NCBI GenBank assembly: GCA_038087875.1
Contig: CM075979.1
Coordinates: 79,732,001-79,796,000 of the forward strand
Reading direction: 5' to 3'
DNA: 64,000 nucleotides
From: Malacoraja senta
Taxonomy: Eukaryota
The notes beneath the pieces were generated by a model. The model was not told the origin of the DNA, ran no database searches, and worked only from the letters and a program-made list of their open reading frames with translations. The position numbers and the translations under genes were made by a program. Position 1 is the stretch's first letter. Each line of letters opens with the position of its first letter. Shown here piece after piece: positions 6,090-62,065 of the stretch.

Positions 6090-6645
6090 AATTAGTTGCC
6101 CCATTTCCAAAGGTAAATCATATCTAACTAACTTAGATAGAATATTCTGTTGAAGTAACATAGGAGTTAACTAAGGCAATGCAGTTAATGGTGTATATCG
6201 ACTTGCAAAAACATTTGTTCAGTATCCCATCTTGACATCAAGGTTGAAAATCACAGAATTAAAGCAACTGCAGCAATATGGGTAGAAAATTGGGTCAATA
6301 ATTGAAATTGGTGCAGTAAGTTTGTCAATCTGGAAGGAAATTTGCAATGGAGTTCCCCAGGGACTGTTACATGGACCAGTGTTTTTCTTGGTAAGTATCA
6401 ATGATTTTTGACTTTTATGTAGTGGACACAATTTCCAAATCTGCAGATGTCAAGAAATTAATGGAGATTATGGAATGTGAGTGAGGAGGATGTTTATAGA
6501 CCAAGGTGATCTGGGTAGATTGGTGAAATTTAATGCTGGCAAAGTTCACCACATCCATTTTGGTAGGAAGAATGAAAGGAGGCATTACGACCTAGAGGGC
6601 ACAATTCTGTAAGGCATCCAAGAGGAGAGATCTGTGTGGTGTATA

Positions 6646-6686
<41 letters not shown>

Positions 6687-6955
6687 ATATATGTGTGTGT
6701 GTATTGTTTATTGACAGTGGCAGTACAGGTTGAGAAAGTGGTTTCAAAAATAACTCTGGATCCAATGCATTACAAATGATGGCATTGAGTGCATGATCAA
6801 AAAAGTCGTGATTAACCTTAATTAAACCAGTGCTCAAATGCAACTGGAGGATTGTAACTAGTTCTGGAGACCAACCCTTAGGGACAATGCTGATGTATTA
6901 GAACGCATGTGGAAGAGATTGATGCAAAATTAATCCGGGAATGAGGGACTTTAAT
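6090..6955 (+). mobile_element. Old CR1 RT fragment
   Basis: Decayed 'GVPQG..GPVFFLVSIND' and 'SKSADV' RT motifs at ~6348-6450. Confidence 0.7.
6641..6702. repeat. (TATATG)n/(TA)n/(TG)n compound microsatellite
   Basis: Directly visible. Confidence 0.95.
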
Positions 6956-6959
6956 GGGT

Positions 6960-7145
6960 GTGGAGGACCAGTCAATGGATATTTTTAAGGCAGCGATAGA
7001 CAGATTCTTGATTAGTACGGGTGTTGGGGGTAATGGCGAGGAGGCAGGAGAATGGGGTTAGGCGGGAGAGATACATCAGCCATGATTAAGTGGTGGAGTA
7101 GACGATGGACTGAATGGCCTAATTCCACTCCAATCATTTATGACC
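6960..7145 (+). mobile_element. CR1 3' end
   Basis: 'ggatatttttaaggcagcgatagacagattc...gaatggcctaattccactcc'. Confidence 0.8.
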
Positions 7146-7264
7146 CCATGTACCAATCAACAATTATGAAAAGGTGAATCAATCATTCAATAGTGCTTTA
7201 CCTTAACCTGCATTGACTGAACTGGCCTGATCTTATTTGCATGTATTTTGCCTCATACTTATAT

Positions 7265-7485
7265 TTTTCATCTCTGGCCTTTGCCCATCTTTCTGGCTAT
7301 CAAATAACCCTCCTCATCTGAGTTGGCCTACTACCTGCCAGGGTTTGTCCTGCCTCTCCTCCTCTTTTCCAGCTTCCCCTCTTCCCCCCCCCCTCCCCCT
7401 CCCAAAGTCCTGACCCAAAATGTCGCCCATCCATGTTCTCCTGGGATGCTGCCTAACCCACTGAGCTGCTCCAGCACTCTGTGCC
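7265..7485 (+). mobile_element. PLE terminal fragment
   Basis: Similar to 5820-6050; ends 'gatgctgcctaacccactgagctgctccagcactctgtg'. Confidence 0.65.
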
Positions 7486-7959
7486 TTCCTGTGAGAATGC
7501 CGTGTTTGGGTCCAGAGCTGAAGCAATTCCTGCAAATCTCCCTCTGTTACAGGCTGTATACTGTGTGTGGTAAGCACTTCACTCACCATCTTCTGCTCCA
7601 GTGCCTTGGGTGGAATTGAAAAAGAATGAGTGGATTTTCAACAACAAAAAAAGTCATTTACTGGATGAATGATTTCCCAGAGCTTACAAGCGTTAAATTT
7701 GCAGGTGATCTTTAAAGAATGATTTGTATTTGACTATGGCACCTGGGGGAGGGTGACAGGGTTAAAGACTAATCTGAATTTGACTGCTTTTGTTAATTGG
7801 CAACACTACTGCGCTATTTATGCAGAAATCTCATTTTGTATTGACGATATGAGCAGAGGGAAAACTAAAAGGTGCACTAGACCAAAGTTAAGGGGTAAAT
7901 GTGTGCAAAGTTCACGGTTGAGAAAGTGGTTTTAAAAAAAGCTAAGGGGATCCTGGGCT

Positions 7960-8085
7960 CATAAGTCACAGGAGCAGAATTAGGCCATTTGACCCATCAA
8001 GTCTACTCCACCATTTAATCATGGCTTTCCCTCTCAACCCCATTCTCCTGCCTTCTCTCCATAACCTTTAATACCCTTACTAATC
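7960..8085 (-). mobile_element. CR1 3' end
   Basis: 'ggagcagaattaggccatttgacccatcaagtctactcc...' same tail family as 5086-5355. Confidence 0.75.
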
Positions 8086-8091
8086 ATGTAC

Positions 8092-8287
8092 GGATGCTAC
8101 CTGACCTGCTGAGTTACTCAGCATGTTTACGAAGGAACTGCAGATGCTGGAAAATCGAAGGTAGACAAAAATGCTGGAGAGACTCAGCGGGTGAGGCAGC
8201 ATCTGTGGAGCTTAGGAAATGGGCAACGTTTATGGTCGAGACCCTTCTTCAGACCTCAGTTACTCCAGCATTTTGTGTCTATCTTTT
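8092..8287. mobile_element. PLE terminus (8125-8254, minus) nested in another PLE terminus (plus)
   Basis: Inner element flanked by near-duplicate ctgagttactcagcat (8109-8124) / ctcagttactccagcat (8255-8271). Confidence 0.7.
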
Positions 8288-8598
8288 GATCCCAGCTGAT
8301 TTGCCTGGGGAAGGCATAATTCAAATAAATAGTTAGATGGGGGGCAAAAATAATATTGTCAGGTTAAAATAGACTAGATTTTGGAAATTTGAAGAAAGTG
8401 AGAATCCTGCAAATATACTGCAAATTAGGAAGCATTTGGGGAGGGAGGAGAAAATATGTTAATGAGACACATGGATGACCTTCAATCAAACCGACCTGCA
8501 TTGTATTCTATAGAGGTATTCTCTATGTACACTTGTCTCCAGTCTGAAATCAGAGTCCGTCACTTCCACTTTGTTTCCTGCCACTTGCTCAACTTTCT

Positions 8599-8734
8599 GT
8601 CTGGAGAAAGGTCTCGACCCAAAACGTCACCCATTCCTTCTCTCCAGAGATGCTGCCTGTCCCGCTGAGTTACTCCAGCTTTTTTGTGTCTATCTTCGGT
8701 TTAAACCAGCACCTGCAGTTCCTTCTCATACAAA
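8599..8734 (+). mobile_element. PLE terminal fragment
   Basis: Decayed hammerhead core then the conserved terminus; flanked by caactttctgtctg (8590-8603) / caactttctatttg (8735-8748). Confidence 0.8.
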
Positions 8735-8809
8735 CAACTTTCTATTTGTGCTCCCCTTCCCAATTTCATGGACATGTTATCAAGAACAAAGGCTTCCCAT
8801 GCATTATAT

Positions 8810-9018
8810 CAAGAGTTCCCAACCTGGGGTAAATTTACCCCCAGCGGGTAAATTTCGCCTACCTAGGGGGTGAATTTGTTGATTCTGGATTTGTACATAT
8901 TTTTTCTCATTGACTGACTGTGTTCATAATTAGTTGTTCATAAATAAGTAAAATAACATTGTTATGTGCTATTAAAGTTGCCTGGGGTAAACGGGACAAA
9001 AAAGGTTGGGAAACCCTG
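8810..9018. mobile_element. hAT (Charlie-like) MITE
   Basis: TIRs caagagttcccaacc / ggttgggaaaccctg (12/15); 8-bp flanks cattatat / catttcat (6/8). Confidence 0.8.
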
Positions 9019-9235
9019 CATTTCATTATCAACCTTGCTTCACTCATCAGTCCACTCCAACAAATAACTCTGTTGATTAAATACAATTTGCCTTTTAAAT
9101 CCATAAAGGTTTTTCTCTAATTAATCCACCTTCGTCAGGTTTAAGAAAACTTGGACAAGAATCTGCCCTAGAGTCATCCAGCCATTCCTTCAAAGCAATA
9201 AGAAGTGTTCAGTTTCAGCGTTATATTTAATTTCT

Positions 9236-9805
9236 CTCATCTCAAAATTTATTTTTTAATTATGGCTTAATAATAGCAAAAAACCGAATACTTAAATTCT
9301 GGAAAAATACACCAATACCAACGCTTAAAATGTGGATTTCAAGCATGTTGGACAACGCACATCTTGAGGAAATGCGATTCCTCCTAATAGATAAATCTTC
9401 CCTCCCCCAATTCTTAACGAGTTGGTCTCCATTTGTCGTCTGTTTGGAATCATACGGTGCAACACAATTGTAGAAGCTAACTGTTCCAGGACTGGGTGAG
9501 GGATGGTCAAGATTATAAATAATGATCTCCTTACTTTTCTTTTTTTATTTTCTACTCTCTTTTTTCTATTTTCTTTTCTTCAATTTTCTTCTTTCACTCT
9601 TTTTTTCTTTTTCACACACTATATACCTCACGTTTTTCTATCTTTTACTATCTACTTTCTTTTTCTTATTCTTTATCATAATAAAAAAAAGTAAGAAGCT
9701 TTACATAAAATGTATTATGTCATTATATACTAGGCACTTTGCTGCCATATGATTGTACTTCTAATAAAATAAAAATATTTAAATATATATATATATATAT
9801 ATATT
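9236..9805 (+). mobile_element. L1-clade LINE 3' fragment (ORF2 C-terminus, 3' UTR, tail)
   Basis: Open frame 9243-9473 'QNLFFNYGLIIAKNRILKFWKNTPIPTLKMWISSMLDNAHLEEMRF...QFLTSWSPF' matches the fish-type L1 ORF2 end; AATAAA at ~9763; 12-bp TSD tatttaatttct (9224-9235 / 9806-9817). Confidence 0.85.
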
Positions 9806-10381
9806 TATTTAATTTCTATGAATTGCTAACTCAAATCAACACATTTATAGCATGGCCTTATACCTTTGCTCACCAATTTTCACCATTCAGCTCTGAATTT
9901 CTGAAATTTTCTTCCAAAAAATATAGTGACGTTTGTTTAGTAATCCTCATGGAGAAGCTTGTGATGTGTTTTGCTGGTCACGTCATTGCTTGTCGTTGCA
10001 TAAAATTTAAACACAGCATTGGCTCTAAATGCACCTGTGTTTACAATGATGATTAAAGCATTTAATAACAATGAGTTGAGCACAATGATGCAAAAGTTGC
10101 CATTTTTCTCATATGATTTAATGTGGTGATTGAAAGTGACATCATGCAGCTCAGTCATATCCCAGAGGAGGTTTCTAAAAATAATGTGGGTTGCAGACTA
10201 TATTATCAGCTCATGTCTTCCTAATACACCTGCTTGTGTCCCAACAGCTTTTGAATTCAGAGTCATGCATTCTTCAGAGCAGTACAGCAAAAACCTTGGG
10301 TTAAAAATAGATTCATTTTAATGCTTTGCTGATCGGCTCGAGAGAGAGCACTGGCTTCTTCCTGGGAGAGGCCACAACCTG

Positions 10382-10680
10382 GTTTAGTTTAGAGATACAG
10401 CGTGGAAACAGGCCATTTTTTTCCCACCGAGTCCACACCTACCAGCGATCCCCGTGCACCAACACTATCCTACACACACTGGGTTACAATTTTTACATCT
10501 ATACCAAGCCAATTAACCTACAAACCTGTATGCCTTTGGAGTGCGGGAGGAAACCCAAGATCTCAGAGAAAACCCAGGCAGGTCACGGGAAGAACGTACA
10601 GACAAGCACTCGTGGACTGGATTGAACCTTGTGTCTGGCACTATAAGGCAGTGGCTCTACTGCTACGCCACCGTGCCGCT
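10382..10680 (-). mobile_element. HE1-type V-SINE, full length
   Basis: From (TAAAC)n tail to reverse head 'gccaccgtgccgc'. Confidence 0.9.
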
Positions 10681-11487
10681 GGGTTAAAGATGGGTTAACC
10701 GGGAGCCTTTTGATGAGCCACTCGAGAGAGAGGTGTTCAGTGAGTCTGTGCATTGAGAGCTAATCTGGTGCTGTGCAAATGTTAGCAGCGACAAGGCACT
10801 CTTGCTTTCCTCTGCCCACAAGCTGTTTCCACTTGCATGTGAATTCACCACGGTGCACTCTCTCCTCACACAGTCCTTTGCCTTCTTGTCCCCCTCCACT
10901 TTCACTTTCATCTTGCTTTCCATCCTGCCTGCCTGCCTGCCTTTGCCAATATCCTTTTTATTTCCCTCCTGCTTTCACTTGCACAGGCACAAGAGTTTTG
11001 CCGATGTAATTAAAGAGAAAAAGGGCAGTTTTACTGTCCACAGTCCCCGAAGCCCTCATTAGAAGGAAATGGGAACAGCTGGTCAGGAAGGTGGGGAGTT
11101 ATTCGTGTATTAAAGGCAGCAGTGTTATTATTGCCCCAGATTGGCGGGAAAGCCAGAAGTGTCTTTATGTGTGTGGCTGATGGACTGGTATTTTCATCTG
11201 GACAGCTCCTTCCAAACTGATAAAATTTTAATTTAACCTGAGCCGGAAAATTCACTTTATTCCCTCTCGCACCATCACTGTGACTTGCAGTGAAATCTGT
11301 AGGAGCAGGAAAGATATCTTTATGATCAGCCGTGAAGAAAGCTGGAATATGGGTATCATTGTGGTGCCACACAGCTGGCAGAGCGGAGTAAAACAAGTTA
11401 TTTTGATTTTTGGGTGGTGTTTCTGTGGCGATGAAGAAAAAAAACAAAAAAACATTTTACTCTGTTAGGGATGGGTCCTTTTCCCTT

Positions 11488-11582
11488 GATACACACAAAA
11501 GGCTGGAGTAACTCAGCGGGTCAGGCAGCATCTCTGGAGAAAAGGAATATGTGACATTTTGGGTTGAGACCCTTCTTCCGAC
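11488..11582 (-). mobile_element. PLE terminal fragment
   Basis: 'gctggagtaactcagcgggtcaggcagcatctctggag...gggttgagacccttcttccg'. Confidence 0.8.
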
Positions 11583-11714
11583 CTTTGTTTCTCCAGTGTA
11601 ATAAAAGGGGTAGGTTAAAGGGAGGTTTGTGTTTGTATTGTGCCTATCACATCCTTCATGTCCCAAGAAGTTTATAGCAAATGAAATATTTTTTTTAAAT
11701 AGTCACAATTGTGA

Positions 11715-11988
11715 TTAGTTTAGAGATTCAGCGTGGAAATAGGCTCACCAAATCCAGGCCGACCAGCAATCCCTGTACACTAACATTATCCTACATACAT
11801 TTACAATTCTTACCGAAGCCAATTAACCTCCAAGCCTATACGTCTTTGGAATGTGGGAGGAAACTGGAGCTCCCGTGGAAATCTCATGCGGAGTACGTAC
11901 AATCTCCGTGTAGATAGCACCTGTAGTCGGAATTGAACCCGGGTCTCTGGCGCTGTAAGGCAGCAACTCTACCGTTGCGTCATTGTGC
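11715..11988 (-). mobile_element. HE1-type V-SINE
   Basis: Tail, V-domain and reverse B box 'aattgaacc'. Confidence 0.85.
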
Positions 11989-12159
11989 AATGTATCGTGC
12001 ATCGTGATCTGGTGTAGGAAATGCAGCAGCAAATAGAAATAAGTGGCGAGTAGTAAATCTATTTAATTAGTAGGGGTTAATATTTCTCTCGTATAATTCG
12101 AACCCATATCAAACCAGGAAGAATACCTCATCTAATCCATTACATCCATCTGTGAGGAC

Positions 12160-12310
12160 AATTAGATGGCATTAGTGTCGTCTGAAATATGGCACCCCCA
12201 ACAGTGCACACCTTCAATGCTGTCCTAATGTTTTGGTCTATCAATATGTTTGTGTTTAAAATGGGGCTTGAACCTCCAAACGTGGGGAAAGATCGCTACC
12301 AATGGGGCCA
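12160..12310 (-). mobile_element. Old DeuSINE head remnant
   Basis: 'tctgaaatatggcacccccaacagtgcac...ggggcttgaacctcc...gctaccaatggggcca' resembles a reversed SacSINE1-type tRNA head. Confidence 0.5.
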
Positions 12311-13544
12311 ATCCAATTCCAATTTTGGCATAAGGTTGAAGATCCTTTGTGGCAATTCCAGCAGATCAGTCAGAGTTCTGCAGCAAATAGTAAAATCATG
12401 TTGTAATCTAAAACCAAGACTCTTTGTTGTGGGTGTCAGTCTAACCAAGATAACTGCATCTCCCCCCCCCCCCCCCCCCCCCGCCCCCCTTCATAGACAG
12501 CTGGGCCATTTTAGCTGTTTCCCTCTCTCTTTTCAGGAACCATCTCTTACCCAAGGCTGTAATCGCCTGTTTCAATTTACCTCCTGATAAACTCAAAGAT
12601 CCTAGGAACAGAATTCGGCCATTCGGCCCTTTGAGTATACTCCACCATTAAATCATGGCTGATCTATCTTTCCTTCTCAACTCCATTCTACCTCCTTCTC
12701 CCTTTAACCTTCCCAGTAATCCAATTGACCTGAGCCAACTCACCTCGCCCCACCCCCCCCTTCCCCAACCACTCTCCAGGTTCCTTTCAGAGAGTGCCGA
12801 TTGAGTCTGTTTCTACCCGCTCTACTGGAAGTAAAGTTCAGATCATTGGTATTGTTGAAGGTTTGTCCTTGCATCCCATCCCTTTTGATCATCCCTTAGA
12901 ATCTGTATGAACTGATCCTTGAACCAGAAGTATGGTAACAGTATTTAGGATTCGGGTCTAGCAATTGGTTCTTGAACTGGCATTGTGTGTGCTCAAATTC
13001 TACTACAGTAACTGAAGAATTTACCAAAATACTTGGAATTTAACGAAACTTTTTTTTAATGGCATGAAAGTGAATGATTACAATTTAGGGAGGGGACACA
13101 AAAGCGGTATATTTATGGTGTTGTGAGAGACTGCAGATGCTGGAATGTGGAGCAACAATCTGCTAGGTATGGTTGATGTTTTGTGTTGGGAAAAACTTGC
13201 ATTTGGTTTATTCAAGTCATCCCTTTTAGGATATTAGATTCTTTTCTTCATGACATTAGAATTCATTAAGGAAAAAAAATTGGCCATCCTTTAGTCTTGC
13301 TTGCATATAACATCAGCTCCTTCAATGCAGTTGACTCTTAACACTCTAGGTTCAGGGATAAGTAAGGATTGAGAATAAAGGCAGGTAGCTTCATCAACAT
13401 CTTCATCCAGTAAATGAATGAAAACAAAATATTCACTGACTTTTTCTGTTGAGCCGGTTTGCAAATTTGCTATGAAAATTCCTCTCTGCCTTCCAAAGTC
13501 TATGGAAGAACTCGCACTTCCAGATCAAGGAAATGGGGACAGTC

Positions 13545-32440: not shown

Positions 32441-32734
32441 TTCTCTCCACATTCTCATCAACTCCCCTTCCCCCCCCCCCCCCCCCAACCCAGTTATAAC
32501 CACACTTACTTAGGGGAATTTACAGCCAATCCATGTGTCTTTTCAATATGGGAGGAAACTCACTGTCACAGGTCGAAAATGCGGACGCCACACAGACAGC
32601 ATCAGAGACCAGTATTGAACCTGGATCTCGTGCTGTGAGGCAGCGGCTCTAATATTTGCACCACATTCAAAAATGTCAATTGCACATCAGTTGTAGCCAT
32701 AAATTAGTCTTCGTTGGCAGGACAAGATTACATA

Positions 32735-32892
32735 TCTTCTCTTCTTCTTCTTGCGTATGGCGTGCACAGCCTAAAGTTGTAGGACAACTTGTTCTATTTG
32801 ATCTTATTTGATCTCATTTGATTGTGCATTGCAAGGTTGATTGCATTTGTCGAAACAGGGCGGACCACGTGAAGGTTACAATCTCCCACCCC
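32735..32892 (-). mobile_element. Ribozyme-headed short retroposon, copy 1
   Basis: (GAA)n tail; same 5' end as the copies at 57693 and 61584; imperfect TSD agattacata / agattacaca. Confidence 0.88.
32839..32892 (-). ncRNA. Predicted minimal HDV-like ribozyme
   Basis: GGGGUGG GA GAUUGUA ACC UUCACGU GGU CCGCCCU GUUUCGA C AAA UGCAAUC: P1 7 bp with G1.U, P2 7 bp, P3 3 bp, 7-nt L3, catalytic-position C. Confidence 0.8.
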
Positions 32893-32919
32893 AGAGATTA
32901 CACATGATTCATTATATAA

Positions 32920-34200
32920 GACATCGGTATTGTGTTCAGTTTTGGGCACCTTGTTATAGAAAAGATGTTATCAAGCTGGAAAGGGGGCAGAAAAGATTTA
33001 TGAGGATATTACCAGTACCTGGGCCTGAGCTATAAGGAGAGTTTGAACAGGTTAGGACTCTATTCCTTGGAGCGAGGATGAGGGGTGATCTGATAGAGGT
33101 GTACAAAATCGTGAGAGGAATGAGATTGGGTAGATGCACAGAGCCTCTCTTGCCCTAAGTAGGGGAATCGAGAACCAGAGAGCATAGGTTTAAGGAGAGG
33201 GACAACAACCTGGCCCTTAACTCCAAGAGGTCCAAGGAGCTCATTGTAGACTTCAGGAAGTCTAAGGGCGGACACCCCCATCCACATTAATGGGACGGAG
33301 GTGGAATGTGTTTCCAGCTTCAGGTTCCTGGGGGTCAACATCTCCGATGATGTCTCTTGGACCCACAATACCTCAACTCTGGTCAAGAAGGCTCACCAGC
33401 GTCTCTTCTTCCTGAGGAGACTAAAGAAGGTCCATCTGTCTCCTCAGATTCTGGTGAACTTCTACCGCTGCACCATCGAGAGCATCCTTACCAACTGTAT
33501 CACAGTATGGTATGGCAACTGCTCTGTCTCCGACCAGAAAGCACTGCAGAGGGTGGTGAAAATTGCCCAACGCATCACCGGTCCCTCACTCCCCTCCATT
33601 GAGTCTGTCCAAAGCAAGCGTTGTCTGCGAAGGGCGCTCAGCATCGCCAAGGACTACTCTCACCCCAACCACAGACTGTTTACCCTCCTACCATCCGGGA
33701 GGCGCTACAGGTCTCTCCGTTGCCGGACCAGCAGGTCCAGGAACAGCTTCTTCCCTGCGGCTGTTACACTACTCAACACTGTACCTCGGTGACTGCCAAT
33801 CACCCCCCCCCCCCCCGGACACTCCTCCCATCAGGAAAAAATACTATGACTGTATGCACGTAAATAGATTTATTTATTGCTCATATTTATGTCGCTCTTC
33901 TAGGGAGATGCTAACTGCATTTCGTTGTCTCTGTACTGTACACTGCACAATGACAATAAAGTTGAATCTGAATCTGAATCTGAGGGTGGAAAGATGTATG
34001 GAATGAGCTGCCAGAGGAAATAGTTGAGGCAGCTACAATCGCAAAGTTTAAGAAACATTTAGACAGGAACGTGGATAGGACATGTTTAGAGGGATATGGG
34101 CCAAATGGAGGTGGGTGGAATTAGTGTAGATTGGACATGTTGGTCGGTGTTTGCAAGATGGGCTGAAGGGCCTTTTTCCTGACTCTATGACACTATGATG
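32920..34200 (+). mobile_element. CR1 3' fragment split by a Rex1 insertion
   Basis: 'YCVQFWAPCYRKDVIKLERGQKRF' before the insertion; CR1 end and (TCTATGAC) tail after 33982. Confidence 0.85.
33202..33981 (+). mobile_element. Rex1/Babar LINE, 5'-truncated, young
   Basis: 'DNNLALNSKRSKELIVDFRK' then a frameshift at ~33275, then ORF 33301-33792 'FRFLGVNISDDVSW...QRLFFLRRLKK...FYRCTIESILT...LLPSGRRYRS...NSFFPAAVTLLN'; (AATCTG)n tail; possible gaggg TSD. Confidence 0.93.
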
Positions 34201-38575: not shown

Positions 38576-40719
38576 ATGGTAGATAGAGAGTTCAAACCTT
38601 TTCCAGAGCGGTGTTTCTTGATGGCACTGCTCACGTATTACGTTCATGACCTGAACATGGTCAACTTTGCCCTGGGAAGGCACATGCACTCTTGGCTCCG
38701 ACAGCACTGATCACACAAGGTCATCAATCTGACAAACCGTTCAATGCAGGGCTTTGTGTCCCTCTCTGGGCTTTTGTGAGAAGCCATTGTTCTGTTGCAT
38801 AGTTATTTATTGACACACAGTGGAAGAAAAAAGGCACAAAACACACGCAAACTGTTGATAAAGAATCTGGCCTCCTATTGAGAGTCATAAAACATTGCGT
38901 GGGTTATTGTTAACTACCAAATCCTTCAAACTTTGCAAATATAAATAAGCTGCCAACTTAGCGGTCAACAGTGAAGTGGGTTAATGCAAGAACCTAGACA
39001 GGAAAGGCAAACCTGATGCGTAACTATCTTCAAGAAGGTGGCTCTTCAGCAGATGAAAGCAACAGATTAGTCCTGGAAATGCTAGTAACTGTATCGTGAA
39101 TTGCAACGGTGGTTAAATTTCTGCAGCCCTTGCAGTTTGCTATTGAATGACCAAGGGCATAATTCAAAGAGCTCGAGTGGCCCACTGAGCCTGCACTGTC
39201 TCTAGCTCATTGAAGCCCAGCAGGAGATTGCTGGCCAATTTGACCTGGGGGAAATATAAAAAGGCTTTTTCAAGGCTGTAATGGGTCATTTGCTGTAGTG
39301 AAGCAATGGGCAGAAATAACTCTGATTGGATTTGGTCAATTGGACTACGCAAGTGGAGTGAACCTGCTTCTGTGTTCACTAAAGATTTTGAACTGTGCTT
39401 AAACTGGGTTAACGTGAACTAGCCTCGACTCCTATGTAAATGCGAAACTAGCTTGTGAAATAGCATTGAGCCAAACTCAATTTTAGGTTGTCCAAGCACT
39501 TCACAGTCAGTGGAGTATTTTGAAAGTGTCGCTACTATTGTATCAAGGACTCGCTATTGTATCAGTTACAAGAGAAATGCATCAGATTTGTTCTCGCATT
39601 TACCAGGTTCTTAAACAGAAGAGTCTTGCAAAGGGTGCTTAGAGTGGACGAACTTGTAATAATTGTGATTCTCATTTCCATTTCATACTTTAAGGACGAT
39701 GAAAGCATTTGTATCGATTTGCAACATTTCTGATTTTTTTGGGTGTTCTCAACCATGAAGTAATATATTCTAACTCCGATCGCCATGGAAACCACCAGGT
39801 CGTAATTCTTTGTTGCTGGCTCCTTTGTAGCATCACCAATGAGTTGGTATCTAAAGGCAGGTCCAATGAATGGTATATACAACTCGCAATTGTAAAGGAC
39901 TGTTAACATCGTAATATGTTCCAAGGATCTTCAAATGTTTTCAAATCTTGTGTGACAGCACGCTCCAAACTATTTTGGTGCCAGCATGTTTTGTGAAGAA
40001 TAACCTTCCTGTTGCCTTTCAGTGTTTTACGATACAAAAGGCACTTAGCAAATGCAAAATGTTGTTGGCCCTGCAATGTAATGGCCGGCACCCAAAAGTT
40101 TTGTCAGGAAGGTTTTTGGAAGTTTTTTTGAAGGACTGGGAAAGATGTTGAGAGGTGACGAGATGTTGGGAGGGAATGTTAGAGGTGATAGGATGAAGAC
40201 ACAAGCAGTCACAAGAGATGTTGAAGTAGGAGTGGGTAGTTTGATTTCTCCTTGTGTCTGCTCTCCCATTTAATATGAACGTAGCTGACCTTTCCCTATT
40301 GAGGCACATTCGTGCATTTAATTCTCTGGATATCCAAAACTCTATTCACCTCTATCTTGTCCACCTCTATCCACCTCTCGGTGACTAAGCCACGAGAGAT
40401 CTCTTGGGTAAAATGTTTGCAAGATACTTTCTCATCGCAGTCCTGAATGACTGTCTCCATATTTAGAGACTCTGGTTCCTTTGTTTTGAGAGTGCTCCCA
40501 CCTCACTGTTGGCAGGCAGTGAAGATGAAGGATTGCCAATGGTTTTCTTGGAAGGAAACCTACCGGTGGTGTTCTTAGATGTCTGCTGCCCTTGACCTTG
40601 CTGATGGAGGCCGTTGGTTTGGAACAAGTTGTCAGAATAGGCTAGATGTGGACCGCAAGTGCTATGTGATGGTGTTTGGTGAAAGGGGTGCCGATCAAGT
40701 GGGATGTTGAGCTCCTTAA

Positions 40720-54959: not shown

Positions 54960-55655
54960 ATGTACAGAAACGTCCCTGCACGATGGAGGAACGGCACGGT
55001 GTATGGAACTATCCCTGGACTGTATAGGTTTGACGCTATATACTGTCCGTCCCTGCATTGAATGGAAGTGTTACCATGTAGAGAACTGTCACTACACTAT
55101 ATGTGTGAGGGGGGAATCATGTATGGAATTGTCCATGCTCTGTAAGTGTGGCAATGCGTACAGAACTGTCGTTGCATTATATGGGAGTGGTGTCGTGTAC
55201 AGACCTGTTGTTGCACCATAAGGAGGTGATGTTGTGTACAGGATTGTTGCTGCACTACATGGGAGTGATGTAGTCTACATATTTGTCCCTGCTTTGTGTG
55301 GGAGTGGCATTGTGCACAGACCCATCCCTGCACTGGTGGTAGAATGGCCCTGTGCAAGTGTGGCGTTGTATCCAGACCCATCCCCGCACTCTGTGGGACT
55401 GGCCCTGTGCAAGTGTGGCGTTGTATCCAGACCCATCCCTGCACTGGTGGTGGAATGGCCCTGTGCAAGTGTGGCGTTGTATCCAGACCCATCCCTGCAC
55501 TGGTGGTGGAATGGCCCTGTGCAAGTGTGGCGTTGTATCCAGACCCATCCCCGCACTGGTGGTGGAATGGCCCTGTGCAAGTGTGGCGTTGTATCCAGAC
55601 CCATCCCCGCTCTCTGTGGGACTGGCACAGTGTATAGAACCATCCCTGCACTGTA
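54960..55655. repeat. Two-tier minisatellite: degenerate ~39-bp units then ~5.5 near-identical 55/56-bp units
   Basis: 'tccagacccatcc' recurs at 55371, 55426, 55482, 55538 and 55594. Confidence 0.92.
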
Positions 55656-57458: not shown

Positions 57459-57692
57459 GAACTGCTGGTCTTTTGATTAAGGTCCCCAGGGTGATCCTGA
57501 GACCACCCATGGTGCACGATCGTTACCAATGCCATTGTGATGGCAGTGTCAGGGCATTTGACACCTCTGTCCAAATAGTTTTTGTTCCACCATCCATGAT
57601 CTGTGTCTGGCAGGTCAATGGGGTGAAGGAAGGTAGGTCCTCCATGGAAGAGCAGGCAGATGATATATTTCAGTTGAATTATCTTTGAAGCA

Positions 57693-57834
57693 CTTCTTCC
57701 TCTTCTTTCGTGTGGCGTGCACAGCCTAAAGTTGGAGGACAACTTGTTCTATTTGATCTTCTGTTTGTGCACGTCGAGTTGACTGCATTAGTCGAAACAG
57801 GGCGGGCCACGTGAAGGTTGCAATCTTCCACCCC
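57693..57834 (-). mobile_element. Ribozyme-headed short retroposon, copy 2
   Basis: TSD tttgaagc (57684-57691 / 57835-57842); (GAA)n-type tail. Confidence 0.9.
57781..57834 (-). ncRNA. Predicted minimal HDV-like ribozyme
   Basis: GGGGUGG AA GAUUGCA ACC UUCACGU GGC CCGCCCU GUUUCGA C UAA UGCAGUC; one A.C mismatch in P3. Confidence 0.72.
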
Positions 57835-59039
57835 TTTGAAGCGCTGTGTATTTTTCTTGACGTGTTCCGCTATCCCGACAACTGAGTGATTGGGCAGGTG
57901 TTGCTTGAATCATGGGAGAAGAGATGCAGAGCATTTTAACACAGGAATGACAGGGGTTGAGTGTGATTGCATCTGATGTGTTCATCTAAAGGACTTAATT
58001 GTGAGCTTGCATAAGCAGGACTCCAACGAGGGCATTCAGAAGTAGATGTAGGCGAGATTTTACTTGTGGCTTTGAGCAATTTTAAATGGCCATTCATCAT
58101 AGCTGTGAAGTGAATGGGGAATGCTCTGTGTCCTACTCCCTGGAGCCATTGAAGGATGGTGCTTTTGTATCCAACCTCTAGGCCTGGGAGTGTGATGTCA
58201 AAACAACTCCCCTGCATTGTTGCTTTCCCTTTGCATCCCGGCCCACACCAAACAAGAACAACAACAAGCACAACAAAAAGAAGAGAGAAAATATGCAGAA
58301 GTGTTGTTCCCTTTTCTACTTATCCATTCTGCCCCTGGGTTTTGTCCTCCACTAGGAGTGTTCAGCTTTGAGGGACCGAGTTCTTTAGTTCTGCTGAGTG
58401 CCCCAAAAATAAAGGTAGGGGAGTAAATGACATTGTTTTCTGTTTAAAAGAAGAAAAGCAAGAGAGGCTTGGTGGTGGAAATACATCTATGGTCACACGC
58501 TAAACATGTGATATCGTAGTTAGGCTTTGTTTCCAACTTCAGAAGCAGTGCATAAAATGTATACCTTCTTGTGTCTCACAAACAGTGACCAGTTCCTGCA
58601 TCTTTACACATCCCAGACTGTTCTTGTTTGGCGCAGGCTATAATGTGAAGAGAAAACAGCATAGGAGGGGAGTTGTATTGATATCACACTCCAATCAATG
58701 GTTCTTTTGTATCACAGGGCGACGCAGCGTCTCAGCGGTAAAGATGCTGCCTTACAGTGCCAGAGCGTCACGCTGTCCTACCTGAAGCTGCCATTAAAAC
58801 CATGCGTGCTCTATTGAGAGGTACGCTGGTTAATGCCTGCAAAGGGTAACTCTAGACCTGATGTCAGGCAGCAGCTAATCCCTGGGATAGACCATTGGTT
58901 AGCGAGTGGAAATGAACTTGAGGTAGTAAAGGTAAAGCAATGGATCATAAAGCTGTTCTGGTCACATGATTTGGTTGCTTCTGGATGATCTCCCATCGCA
59001 GCTGGAGGCAGCTGATGTCAGACCCACGTGAACTGAAAG

Positions 59040-60384: not shown

Positions 60385-61583
60385 CTAACATAACTTTGTA
60401 TTGTACAATAACACTTTGTAAAAGAGAAGTCATTATTTATTATTTCAGCTGGTTTTTAATTATCGATTCTTATCGATTCTTATTCGTAACAGGTAATTAT
60501 CCCATCTGAAGCTAGTGCTTTAGCAGGGACAGTAGAGCTATCATTTGTTTCGGTCCACTTTTGTTGGAATTGAGGTTAATGAGGTGACAATCCTAGGATA
60601 AAGTATAGCCTACAAAGTGGTACCCGCGATGGATCTTAGTCGGGGGTAAGAAATGTGTTCATGTCCTTGTTCATATGACTGTTTCTGCCTAATGCATTCC
60701 CTTTACATATCCAGATGCGCAAAGTTAATTCCCCACCCCCCACCTTATTCACCCCCACCTCCCCCCCCACCCCAAAGCAACTCACATGAGAGCTCAAGTC
60801 ATCTCCTTTCAGGGAGAGATTAACAATAGGCCACGTCAAGCATAAAGGAAAACTGTCCCTCCCTGCCTGCCTGCCTCATTTCAGTTCCCTTTCAAGAACC
60901 TTTTCCCTTCCTGGAGAGACCTCTTCAGTTCTGCGTGGAATCTATTGATGGTTGAAACAAGCAGGATTTTATAATGGTACCTTTTGTGAGGAGGCCGGCC
61001 TGTCACGCTGTTTTGCTGCAGTCACGGTTCTCTATGGAGATTTAGCAAGTGTTGTTTTGGATGCAGTTTCCAACTTCTGTCCTGTGGTGTTAAAACCAGA
61101 GCGAATAAAAACTTAAAATAGGAATGCTGGTTTTTTTTTAGAAATAAATGCTGGGTTTTTTTTTCCACATTCGGGCTGAAGAACTGCAGGAAATGAGATG
61201 CAGGGAGGGTAGTAATTTTCATTTTCCGAGTATCTGGGTCTTCTTGATCCTGAACCATGGTGACGGAGAGCTATTTATTCCCATTGTTAGGCTGGTGTGT
61301 GACCTGAACCCCTCTGTGGTAGCAAAGCTGTTATCAGGCAACTGAACCATCCTGCCATCAACTATAGAGTCCTGAGCTATAATCTACCTCATTGGAGACC
61401 CTCAGACTATCTTTGATTGGACTTTACTGGACTTTATCTTGCACGAAACATTATTCACGTTATTCCCTTTATCATGTATGAGTGCAGTGTGGATGGCTCG
61501 ATTGTAATCATGTGTTGTCTTTCCACTGACTGCCTCAGAGGGCGCTGGAGGCAGGTTCTCTGGATGCTTTCAAGAGAGAGCTA

Positions 61584-61721
61584 CTTCTTCCTCTTTCGTG
61601 TGGCGTGCACAGCCTAAAGTTGTTGGACAACTTGTTCTATTTGATCTTCTGTGTGTGCACGTCGAGTTGATGCATTAGTCGAAACAGGACGGACCACGTG
61701 AAGGTTGCAATCTTCCACCCC
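61584..61721 (-). mobile_element. Ribozyme-headed short retroposon, copy 3
   Basis: Perfect 12-bp TSD aagagagagcta (61572-61583 / 61722-61733). Confidence 0.92.
61669..61721 (-). ncRNA. Predicted minimal HDV-like ribozyme
   Basis: GGGGUGG AA GAUUGCA ACC UUCACGU GGU CCGUCCU GUUUCGA C UAA UGCAUC; 1-nt bulge in P2. Confidence 0.75.
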
Positions 61722-62065
61722 AAGAGAGAGCTAGATAGGGCTCTTACAAATAGCAGAGTCAGGGGATATGGGGAGAAGGCAGGAACGGGGTACTGATTGG
61801 GGATGATCAGCCATGATGATATTGAATGGCGGTGCTGGCTCGAAGGGCCGAATGGCCTACTCCTGCACCTATTGTCTATTAACATGCAATAAAAGCTTTT
61901 CACTGTACCACAGTACACGTGACAATAAACTAAACACAACCTCAACTCAAAGCCACCTGACAGTTTGCTGGGCTGGCCTTGTCGTTGTTGACATTGTGTT
62001 GGTGGTACGCGCCGCATCCCTGGTGTGAAGTGACGGAGAGCGCGGATGTTTAACACGGCAAAGTA

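What the first reader, a model, noticed from the sequence alone, without database searches (positions are those of the whole stretch)
32735..32892. Tiny retroposon whose 5' end is a minimal HDV-like self-cleaving ribozyme
Seen: three dispersed copies (32735-32892, 57693-57834, 61584-61721, all minus) share the same 5' nucleotide, a (GAA)n-type tail and target-site duplications. The first 54 nt of this copy read GGGGUGG-GA-GAUUGUA-ACC-UUCACGU-GGU-CCGCCCU-GUUUCGA-C-AAA-UGCAAUC. That gives the HDV order P1-P2-P3-L3-P3'-P1'-J4/2-P2', with a 7-bp P1 opened by a G1.U wobble, a 7-bp P2, a 3-bp P3, a 7-nt L3, P4 reduced to about 5 nt, and a C (complement of 32849) at the catalytic position before NAA. 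Established: HDV-like ribozymes cleave just 5' of G1 and define the 5' ends of R2, RTE and L1Tc/ingi retrotransposons. Inference: this is a promoter-less non-autonomous element that is co-transcribed with host RNA, cuts out its own 5' end and is copied by a partner LINE. That would explain a fixed 5' end with no clear Pol III A box. I cannot tell whether this family is already catalogued.
Basis: partly seen in the sequence, partly recalled or inferred. Interest (0 to 1): 0.92.

Follow-up and report, generated by a model that had tools for sequence, protein, structure and literature searches.

The report
Ribozyme-headed mini retroposon, three copies
Three copies of a ~140-base jumping element in this chordate genome each begin at the base where a stripped-down hepatitis-delta-type self-cutting RNA fold would cut; this is a known retrotransposon trick in an unusually small vertebrate form, and actual cutting is not shown.

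Summary
Three full-length minus-strand copies (138-158 nt) start with GGGGTGG, end in a (GAA)n-like tail and are flanked by target-site duplications.

Evidence for the fold:
- Their first 54 nt fit a P4-less HDV-type nested double pseudoknot. My own descriptor finds it only at these copies (0.05-0.1 hits per shuffled window).
- On the bare heads, the best Rfam matches among 4227 families are CPEB3_ribozyme and HDV-F-prausnitzii. Both are far below threshold.
- L3 plus J1/4 match the CPEB3 consensus at 9 of 9 bases. Five P1/P3 pairs differ from CPEB3 on both sides yet still pair.

Evidence for the family:
- DNA contigs of four coded organisms carry thousands of pieces with one sharp 5' boundary at G1.
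- Head and tail are conserved (91%, 98%); the middle is not (~38%).

Not shown:
- Cleavage. PolyA RNA-seq shows the element inside longer transcripts, with no pile-up of read starts at G1.
- Covariation within the family: three copies give no power.
- The partner LINE, which is not in this window.

Best reading: a promoter-less, internally deleted LINE derivative that trims its own 5' end.

The scan has noted this family many times elsewhere in this genome. It is a new variant of a known design.

The parts
32735..32892 (-). Copy 1, full element (158 nt). It belongs to a subfamily with a 12-nt GATCAAATR duplication in the middle.
32839..32892 (-). 54-nt HDV-type head of copy 1. Parts: P1 32886-32892 with 32857-32863; J1/2 32884-32885; P2 32877-32883 with 32839-32845; P3 32874-32876 with 32864-32866; L3 UUCACGU 32867-32873; G37 U38 (P1.1 partners) 32855-32856; P4 replaced by UUCGA 32850-32854; J4/2 C-A-A-A 32846-32849.
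   Evidence: descriptor hit with 0 mismatches; Rfam RF02682 global alignment to exactly 32892-32839
32849..32849 (-). C44, the predicted catalytic cytosine. It is the first base of a 4-nt J4/2 that abuts the 3' strand of P2.
   Evidence: no variant at 4% or more in family-wide contigs
32796..32838 (-). Variable middle segment, about 38% identical between subfamilies and rich in indels.
   Evidence: many joints and loose ends here
32753..32803 (-). Conserved 3' module. It reads as the end of an ORF (DQIEQVVLQL, then stop), overlapping a hairpin AAGTTGT-CCT-ACAACTT, followed by GGCTGTGCACGCC. This is the presumed recognition site for the partner reverse transcriptase.
   Evidence: (46 of 47 identical between subfamilies)
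32735..32752 (-). (GAA)n-like tail; its length varies among family members.
   Evidence: ragged 3' boundaries at 57693-57701 and CTTCTT-ending loose ends
32895..32902 (-). Upstream TSD of copy 1 (TGTAATCT). The downstream copy is at 32725-32732.
57693..57834 (-). Copy 2, full element (142 nt), near the family majority sequence. Head is 57781-57834 and C44 is at 57791. Private changes: C29 (breaks A17-U29) and G52. TSD GCTTCAAA at 57835-57842 and 57684-57691.
61584..61721 (-). Copy 3, full element (138 nt). Head is 61669-61721. It has U33 (G4.U33) and a 1-nt deletion in the 3' strand of P2. TSD TAGCTCTCTCTT at 61722-61733 and 61572-61583.

Best explanation
This is a very short bipartite non-autonomous retroposon. 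It consists of the 5' end and the 3' end of a LINE joined by a variable linker, and it has no promoter of its own.

Proposed mechanism:
1. The element is transcribed as a passenger of host or neighbouring transcripts. This step is shown.
2. Its first 54 nt fold into a minimal HDV/CPEB3-type nested double pseudoknot. The fold has a G1.U36 wobble, a 7-bp P1, a 7-bp P2, a 3-bp P3, L3 UUCACGU with U20/G25, a C22-G37 P1.1, and P4 reduced to UUCGA. C44 sits at the head of a 4-nt J4/2. The fit to the fold is shown.
3. The fold cuts the RNA immediately 5' of G1, which gives every new copy the same first base. This step is inferred.
4. The conserved 3' hairpin plus the (GAA)n tail is recognised in trans by the reverse transcriptase of a partner LINE. 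The LINE copies the RNA by target-primed reverse transcription and leaves 8-13-bp TSDs. The TSDs and tail are shown; the partner is inferred.
For: Fold and its specificity:
- The copies, TSDs and tails are confirmed.
- My descriptor hits only these copies, at their first base. Shuffles give 0.05-0.1 hits per window.
- 98% of pair cells form standard pairs in register, against 30-49% when the partners are slid.
- Unconstrained MFE gives P1. With the P1 strands blocked, MFE gives P2 plus P3.

Similarity to known HDV-type ribozymes:
- On the bare heads, the best of 4227 Rfam families are RF00622 CPEB3 (12.2 bits, E 0.36) and RF02682 HDV-F-prausnitzii (12.0 bits, E 1.8). The latter aligns globally to exactly bases 1-54.
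- Against the CPEB3 consensus, L3 plus G37 U38 match at 9 of 9 bases. Five of ten P1/P3 pairs changed on both sides and all still pair.
- Residue numbering matches CPEB3: G1.U36, U20.G25, C22 (PMC4836649).

Family-wide data:
- 6,298-13,202 contig pieces per DNA run in four coded organisms carry the element.
- There is one 5' boundary at G1, seen in 118-348 contigs per run with unrelated flanks. Depth drops more than 1000-fold outside the element.
- Subfamily-level variants in the head fall only at tolerated places: base 8 in J1/2, base 42 in the linker, base 45 (the N of C-N-A-A), and bases 31 and 32, which keep their P1 pairs.
- Between subfamilies the head is 49/54 identical, the tail 46/47 and the middle 13/33.

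Other support:
- RNA reads run on into unlike flank in 94% of cases, so the element is co-transcribed.
- There is no tRNA, 5S or 7SL match.
- The design is established for R2, RTE and Ingi/L1Tc elements and their deletion derivatives (PMC6765202, PMC5786205, PMC3414825).
- P4-less HDV-like ribozymes are described (PMC10879173); theta ribozymes tested there self-cleaved in vitro.
Against: - No cleavage data exist.
- In polyA RNA-seq, no place where many molecules begin was reported at G1, and 124 reads cross G1 into flank. That test is not strand-resolved and needs at least 20% of depth to flag a site.
- Rfam scores are far below the gathering thresholds of 35 and 44 bits.
- The three copies give no compensatory double change.
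- The two P1 variants are CpG transitions, which could be mutational rather than selected.
- The match to the CPEB3 core could be convergence on a small active site, as argued for R2 in PMC3774820.
- The partner LINE was not seen here.
- G1 overlaps the TSD by one base in all three copies.
Confidence: 0.6

Rival explanations
1. The head really has the HDV-type fold, inherited from the partner LINE's 5' end, but cutting is not its main or current role in this mini-element. It may instead be kept as a protein-binding or 5'-protecting structure, as the R2 5' pseudoknot binds R2 protein and as a stable 'cap-like' fold. Alternatively it may be a slow or inactive relic. On this reading the fixed 5' end comes from the LINE's own transcription start or from full-length reverse transcription.
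For: - No pile-up of RNA starts at G1, with many read-through reads.
- R2 ribozyme folds also bind protein and protect the RNA 5' end (PMC6765202, PMC13708176).
- The first 77 nt of L1Tc is both promoter and ribozyme (PMC3383444).
Against: - All catalytic-core residues are intact in the family majority, and no subfamily-level variant touches them.
- A purely structural role would not need C44-N-A-A, the U20/G25 pair or the G1.U wobble.
- 94% of the element's RNA reads run on into unlike flanking sequence, so most of this RNA is part of longer transcripts.
Confidence: 0.2
2. An ordinary SINE whose head is an unrecognised internal Pol III (or Pol II) promoter. The HDV-like drawing would be coincidental, and the fixed 5' end would be the transcription start.
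For: - Bases 38-43, TTTCGA, resemble the B-box core GTTCGA at 5 of 6 positions (read by eye).
- The element has no T4 run.
- A fixed 5' end abutting the TSD is also what a Pol III SINE shows.
- PolyA RNA-seq would not capture Pol III transcripts.
Against: - No A box is present.
- ARAGORN and Rfam find no tRNA, 5S, 7SL or snRNA similarity even at E up to 10.
- The only Rfam families that surface are HDV-type ribozymes.
- The chance rate of the full descriptor is about 0.05 per 128 kb, and here it sits at base 1 of the repeat.
- The unpaired core matches CPEB3 at 9 of 9 bases, with helices changed in a compensating way.
Confidence: 0.12
3. Chance or artefact: the repeat is real, but the pseudoknot is an over-reading of a G+C-rich head.
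For: - The fold was found by eye on the same sequence that is used to support it.
- There is no within-family compensatory change.
- Rfam E-values are 0.36-1.8.
Against: - Descriptor null.
- Slid-partner control: 98% paired against 30-49%.
- Head conservation of 91% against about 38% for the adjacent middle.
- Two independent HDV-class Rfam models rank top.
Confidence: 0.04

Closest known systems
NARTc/RIME and SIDER, the deletion derivatives of L1Tc/ingi (Ingi clade, trypanosomatids), carrying the Pr77/L1TcRz HDV-like ribozyme
   Same: Both are non-autonomous elements made of the 5' and 3' ends of a LINE. The first bases are an HDV-like ribozyme that frees the RNA from co-transcripts, and insertion is dispersed (PMC3185411, PMC4035085, PMC5786205).
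   Different: The host is a chordate, not a protist. The head is 54 nt and lacks P4, against 77 nt. No promoter activity is known for it. The tail is (GAA)n rather than poly(A). Relatedness to an Ingi/Vingi LINE is only a lead from other notes of this scan and was not tested here.
R2 SIDEs (short internally deleted elements of R2)
   Same: These are ORF-less deletion derivatives that keep the 5' HDV-like ribozyme and the 3' protein-binding end, and are mobilised in trans (PMC3414825).
   Different: R2 elements and their SIDEs are specific to a site in 28S rDNA and are co-transcribed by Pol I. This family inserts at varied sites with 8-13-bp TSDs. The R2 ribozyme is about 180 nt, with a large P4 and J1/2.
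Mammalian CPEB3 ribozyme (Rfam RF00622)
   Same: Positions 1-38 have the same numbering. Shared features are the G1.U36 wobble, a 7-bp P1 starting GGGG, a 3-bp P3, an identical 7-nt L3 UUCACGU, an identical G37 U38, and a C at the head of a 4-nt J4/2 with A-A (PMC4836649).
   Different: There is no P4 (5 nt against about 18 nt). The P2 sequence is different. The score is 12.2 bits against a gathering score of 35. CPEB3 is a single conserved intronic locus in mammals, whereas this is a high-copy mobile element.
Minimal (P4-less) HDV-like ribozymes: drz-Mtgn and the theta ribozymes of gut phages
   Same: P4 is absent or vestigial, the total size is about 50-55 nt, and the core rules are the same. 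Tested theta ribozymes self-cleave in vitro (PMC10879173).
   Different: [quoted passage not shown] This one heads a retroposon in an animal genome. Similarity to the theta consensus was not tested here.
Other ribozyme-bearing short retroposons: Schistosoma Sm-alpha SINEs (hammerhead) and twister-variant non-LTR elements of S. mansoni
   Same: A self-cleaving RNA is used to process a short retroelement transcript (PMC6765202, PMC8501958).
   Different: The ribozyme classes are different. Sm-alpha is transcribed by Pol III and is often found in tandem.

Membership tests
HDV-like (delta-like) self-cleaving ribozymes, structural class | Nested double pseudoknot in the order P1-P2-P3-L3-P3'-P1'-J1/4-(P4)-J4/2-P2' | tested here: met
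   The descriptor hits copy 1 with 0 mismatches and copy 2 with 1. 49 of 50 pair cells are standard pairs.
HDV-like (delta-like) self-cleaving ribozymes, structural class | G1 at the cleavage site, forming a G.U wobble at the base of P1 | tested here: met
   G1.U36 is present in all three copies; the same feature occurs in CPEB3 (PMC4836649).
HDV-like (delta-like) self-cleaving ribozymes, structural class | Catalytic C as the first base of J4/2, followed by N-A-A and then the 3' strand of P2 | tested here: met
   C44-(A/U/G)-A-A-U48. Base 45 varies among U, G and A, while C44, A46 and A47 do not.
HDV-like (delta-like) self-cleaving ribozymes, structural class | An L3 loop able to form the U20.G25 pair, and P1.1 (C22 with the G after P1') | tested here: met
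   L3 is UUCACGU, followed after P1' by G37 U38. This matches the Rfam CPEB3 consensus at 9 of 9 bases.
HDV-like (delta-like) self-cleaving ribozymes, structural class | P4 helix | tested here: not met
   Only UUCGA lies between G37 U38 and C44. This is the condition that defines the 'minimal' subclass (PMC10879173).
HDV-like (delta-like) self-cleaving ribozymes, structural class | Covariation support for the helices | tested here: inconclusive
   There are no double changes among the three copies. There are five double changes, all still pairing, against the CPEB3 consensus. Linked sequences of other copies could not be fetched.
HDV-like (delta-like) self-cleaving ribozymes, structural class | Mg2+-dependent self-cleavage 5' of G1, abolished by C-to-U at the catalytic position | not testable with these tools
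   The only in vivo proxy was polyA RNA-seq, which gave no start pile-up at G1 but is a weak test.
Rfam HDV-type families (RF00622 CPEB3, RF02682 HDV-F-prausnitzii, RF00094 and others) | Score at or above the family's gathering threshold | tested here: not met
   No match at gathering score. Sub-threshold scores are 12.2 bits against 35, and 12.0 bits against 44.
Bipartite non-autonomous LINE (RIME/NARTc, R2 SIDE, Vingi or RTE deletion derivatives) | No ORF, TSD-flanked, with a LINE-type 3' end carrying a simple-repeat tail | tested here: met
   The element is 138-158 nt, has TSDs of 8-12 bp and a (GAA)n tail of variable length. Its 3' module reads as the end of an ORF.
Bipartite non-autonomous LINE (RIME/NARTc, R2 SIDE, Vingi or RTE deletion derivatives) | Head and tail identical to the 5' and 3' ends of an autonomous LINE in the same genome | not tested
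   No such LINE is in the window. Other notes of this scan name a Vingi-like LINE (s1-140056, s1-141407); this was not checked here.
SINE in the strict sense (Pol III head from tRNA, 5S or 7SL) | A head derived from a small RNA, with A/B boxes | tested here: not met
   ARAGORN finds none. Rfam finds no tRNA, 5S or 7SL at E up to 10.

The most novel reading that the evidence does not exclude
The mammalian CPEB3 ribozyme is a domesticated copy of this class of retroposon or LINE head. The cartilaginous-fish family would then preserve the mobile ancestor type: the same 38-nt front half with an identical L3 and J1/4, here with P4 trimmed away. That would give the CPEB3 ribozyme, whose origin is unexplained, a transposon source. 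The evidence here does not exclude this. It equally fits convergence on a very small active site.
Probability: 0.12. Interest if true: 0.85.

Novelty: new variant of a known kind. Interest (0 to 1): 0.6.

Why it matters
Retrotransposons that free their own 5' end with an HDV-like ribozyme are known. [quoted passage not shown]

Three things are new here:
- The ribozyme is of the P4-less 'minimal' type. [quoted passage not shown]
- The host is a vertebrate-lineage animal, in which the element is extremely abundant and shared by several species.
- The catalytic core is base-for-base that of the mammalian CPEB3 ribozyme.

If the head is active, this would be among the smallest self-processing mobile elements known. 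It would give minimal HDV-like ribozymes a clear eukaryotic function. Thousands of genomic copies would serve as a natural mutational scan of the fold. It would also offer a concrete candidate lineage for the origin of CPEB3.

Thousands of potential cleavage sites inside host transcripts would further raise the question of how the host tolerates sense-oriented insertions.

Tried and rejected
- Rfam at gathering thresholds over the whole window: nothing.
- Rfam at E up to 10 on 231 nt: only noise, namely lncRNA fragments and a Na+ riboswitch hairpin formed with the copy-1 flank.
- tRNA search: none.
- More copies or other ribozyme-headed families in the window, by blastn, nhmmer and a relaxed descriptor: none. 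A strict-descriptor hit at 40671 (+) with a 57-nt linker has a P1 made almost entirely of G.U pairs and was discarded.
- Fetching linked copies for covariation from metagenome contigs (tail and head patterns), genome contigs and viral contigs: 0 hits each.
- Within-family covariation on three copies: no power. Three one-sided changes keep their pair, one breaks it, and there are no double changes.
- Partner LINE in the window: the only LINE-like ORF (33301-33792, PF09004) ends in (TGAATC)n and does not share the tail.
- Whole-element MFE is not more stable than shuffles (z = +1.06). This is uninformative for a pseudoknot.
- Papers by Ruminski 2011, Webb 2009 and Kojima 2011 are not held.
- No paper in the library links HDV-like ribozymes with skates. 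A broader two-of-six-terms search with 'HDV-like' and shark/cartilaginous-fish names put no HDV-like paper among the 15 it listed.
- An alternative register offered by the CPEB3 model has C41 as the catalytic C. I rejected it because it would make J4/2 7 nt long instead of the canonical 4 nt abutting P2 (PMC4836649).

Full report
WHAT IS THERE

Three minus-strand copies sit at 32735-32892, 57693-57834 and 61584-61721. A 27-nt core pattern and a 32-nt tail pattern each hit these three places and nothing else, with 0 hits in shuffles. A sensitive blastn/nhmmer search finds no further or truncated copy in the window.

All copies begin GGGGTGG and end in a GAA-rich run. TSDs are clear for copy 2 (GCTTCAAA) and copy 3 (TAGCTCTCTCTT). 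Copy 1 has an exact TGTAATCT offset by 2 nt from the element, which can also be read as a decayed 13-mer.

In all three copies the base after the downstream TSD is also G, so the 5' end is defined only to within 1 nt. This is the usual microhomology at a 5' junction.

THE FOLD AND ITS CHANCE LEVEL

I wrote a descriptor from general HDV rules:
- G1 and a 7-bp P1
- J1/2 of 0-5 nt
- P2 of 6-7 bp
- P3 of 3 bp
- L3 of 7-8 nt containing a C
- a G directly after P1'
- a linker, then C-N-A-A, then P2'

It hits copy 1 at its first base with no mismatch and copy 2 with one mismatch. Dinucleotide shuffles of the whole window give 0.05-0.1 hits on both strands. A relaxed version finds nothing else.

On the three heads, 49 of 50 pair cells are standard pairs. 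When the partners are slid by 1-3 columns, only 30-49% are. Unconstrained folding recovers P1. With the P1 strands blocked, the minimum-energy fold is P2 plus P3.

Private defects are a P3 A.C mismatch in copy 2 and a 1-nt deletion in the 3' strand of P2 in copy 3.

COMPARISON WITH CURATED RIBOZYME MODELS

Nothing reaches an Rfam gathering score. When only the bare head is searched, HDV-type ribozymes rank top among 4227 families.
- Copy 1: RF02682 HDV-F-prausnitzii, 12.0 bits, E 1.8, aligned globally to exactly 32892-32839. The only other match was a weaker Na+ riboswitch fragment (9.8 bits, E 3.5).
- Copy 2: RF00622 CPEB3_ribozyme, 12.2 bits, E 0.36, plus RF02682.

These are sub-threshold and prove nothing on their own.

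Against the CPEB3 consensus printed, the unpaired core (L3 UUCACGU plus G37 U38) is identical at 9 of 9 bases. Five of the ten P1/P3 pairs differ on both sides and all still pair. The residue numbers reported for CPEB3 (G1.U36, U20.G25, C22 in P1.1, a 4-nt J4/2 headed by the catalytic C; PMC4836649) map one-to-one onto this head as far as base 38.

P4 is replaced by UUCGA. U38-A43 could close a UUCG loop; I read this by eye.

FAMILY-WIDE EVIDENCE

Logan contigs of four DNA runs from four coded organisms lay 6,298-13,202 pieces each on copy 2 at 80% or more likeness. Summed depth falls more than 1000-fold just outside 57693-57834.

There is a single 5' boundary at 57834, in 118-348 contigs per run whose flanks disagree (agreement about 0.35). 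The 3' boundary is ragged at 57693-57701, consistent with tails of different length. The fixed 5' end is therefore a property of the whole family.

One contig of organism D skips 57694 to 57851 at the depth of the single-copy flanks. This suggests an empty site and so a lineage-specific insertion; I did not check it base by base.

Copy 2's C29 and G52 are private, because the family majority has U29 and A52, which restore A17-U29 and U12-A52.

Variants at subfamily level inside the head are:
- base 8 (A/G), in J1/2
- base 42 (G>A), in the linker
- base 45 (U/G/A), the N of C-N-A-A
- base 31 (C>U) and base 32 (G>A), which give G6.U31 and U5-A32

None touches L3, P3, G37 U38, C44 or A46-A47. By my own count about 46% of possible transitions in the head would be tolerated, so five of five tolerated sites has a probability of roughly 0.02. 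This is post hoc, and two of the sites are CpG transitions.

Between the two subfamilies in the window, the head is 49/54 identical, the tail 46/47 and the middle 12-13/33. That is a two-module pattern.

RNA EVIDENCE

In one raw polyA RNA-seq run (X22), 487 reads lay on copy 2, and 94% run on for 20 or more letters into unlike sequence. The element is therefore mostly part of longer transcripts, which supports co-transcription.

The same run gives no positive sign of cleavage. No place where many molecules begin was reported at G1, and 124 reads cross G1 into heterogeneous flank with a median of 80 nt.

The test is weak for four reasons:
- It flags a site only at 20% or more of local depth.
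- It is not strand-resolved, and reads whose first mate lies on the minus strand are about twice as many as those on the plus strand. If the library is stranded, this suggests that antisense RNA dominates.
- Most expressed copies are old; 396 of 487 reads are only 90-95% alike.
- PolyA selection loses many fragments.

I count it as absence of support, not as refutation.

THE 3' MODULE AND THE PARTNER

The conserved 3' part contains a hairpin (AAGTTGT-CCT-ACAACTT) whose stem is stable while its loop varies across the family. This is followed by GGCTGTGCACGCC and the (GAA)n tail.

In copy 2 the frame is open for 19 codons and ends in DQIEQVVLQL, then a stop (the same ending is seen in copy 1). 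This looks like the end of a LINE ORF.

No LINE with this tail is in the window. The one LINE-like ORF at 33301-33792 (PF09004, E 9e-17) ends in (TGAATC)n.

Other notes of this scan name a Vingi-like LINE, with a CPEB3-type ribozyme at its own 5' end, as the partner. I could not test that.

MECHANISM AND RIVALS

The best reading (0.6) is a promoter-less, internally deleted LINE derivative. It rides in host transcripts, cuts itself free 5' of G1 with a minimal HDV-type ribozyme, and is copied in trans through its 3' hairpin and repeat tail.

The rivals are:
- The fold is real but serves mainly as a protein-binding or protective structure, or is a relic (0.2).
- The head is an unrecognised Pol III or Pol II promoter and the fold is coincidental (0.12). 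In favour is only a 5-of-6 B-box-like TTTCGA. Against it, there is no A box and no small-RNA similarity.
- Chance (0.04).

WHAT IS KNOWN

HDV-like ribozymes at LINE 5' ends, and ORF-less derivatives that keep them, are established (PMC6765202, PMC3414825, PMC3185411).

Kojima 2018 lists RTE, Ingi, Vingi and R2 as the only clades reported to make bipartite non-autonomous LINEs. [quoted passage not shown] Vingi is not among the latter (PMC5786205).

A search of the held library for HDV-like ribozymes together with skates returned nothing, and a broader search with shark and cartilaginous-fish names put no HDV-like paper among the 15 it listed. Repbase and Dfam could not be consulted.

The design is therefore known. 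The P4-less form in an animal retroposon, and the CPEB3-identical core, are the new parts. Eickbush's caution applies to the CPEB3 resemblance: ribozyme active sites converge because few bases can fill them (PMC3774820).

HOST

The tools code the organism names. The LINE-like ORF's nearest atlas clusters are chordate. 'Skate' comes only from other agents' notes, and I did not verify it.

The same family has been reported many times by this scan on other pieces of this genome.

Noticed in passing
window 33301-33987 (+): A LINE fragment. Its ORF has a PF09004 'ALKBH8_N' domain (E 9e-17), which in chordates marks retrotransposon ORFs. It ends in AATAAAG plus (TGAATC)n at about 33960-33987. The tail differs from that of the ribozyme element, so this is not its partner.
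   Followed up: partly
window 57600-57930, run X22: RNA reads over the element are strand-asymmetric: reads whose first mate lies on the minus strand are about twice as many as those on the plus strand, across the whole element. If the library is stranded, antisense RNA of the element outnumbers sense RNA. This could reflect depletion or instability of sense (cleavable) transcripts, or just the orientation bias of insertions in genes.
   Followed up: no
window 57694-57851, run X4, organism D: One contig, at the depth of the single-copy flanks, skips the whole of copy 2 (156 nt). This is probably an empty site in a related organism, which would make copy 2 a lineage-specific and fairly recent insertion.
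   Followed up: no
window 32771-32803 and 57726-57785 (-): The element's 3' module is readable as the end of an ORF (…EDQIEQVVLQL, then stop). The stop lies inside the 3' arm of the hairpin. In copy 2 the frame is open for 19 codons.
   Followed up: partly
window 55158-55607: Two adjacent tandem arrays: a 39-bp unit in 3.1 copies (75% matches) and a 56-bp unit in 5.2 copies (94% matches). Overlapping ORFs on both strands have no Pfam match.
   Followed up: no
window 32880-32899 (-): In copy 1 the upstream flank AAUCUCU can pair with bases 9-15 (AGAUU…), forming a hairpin across the cleavage site. Rfam reports it as a spurious Na+ riboswitch fragment. Such flank-dependent alternative folds could make cleavage locus-dependent.
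   Followed up: no
window 34000-34190 (+): Directly after the (TGAATC)n tail lies another repeat, with motifs such as GGCCAAATGGAGG and GGGCTGAAGGGCCT. It looks like a separate interspersed element and was not analysed.
   Followed up: no
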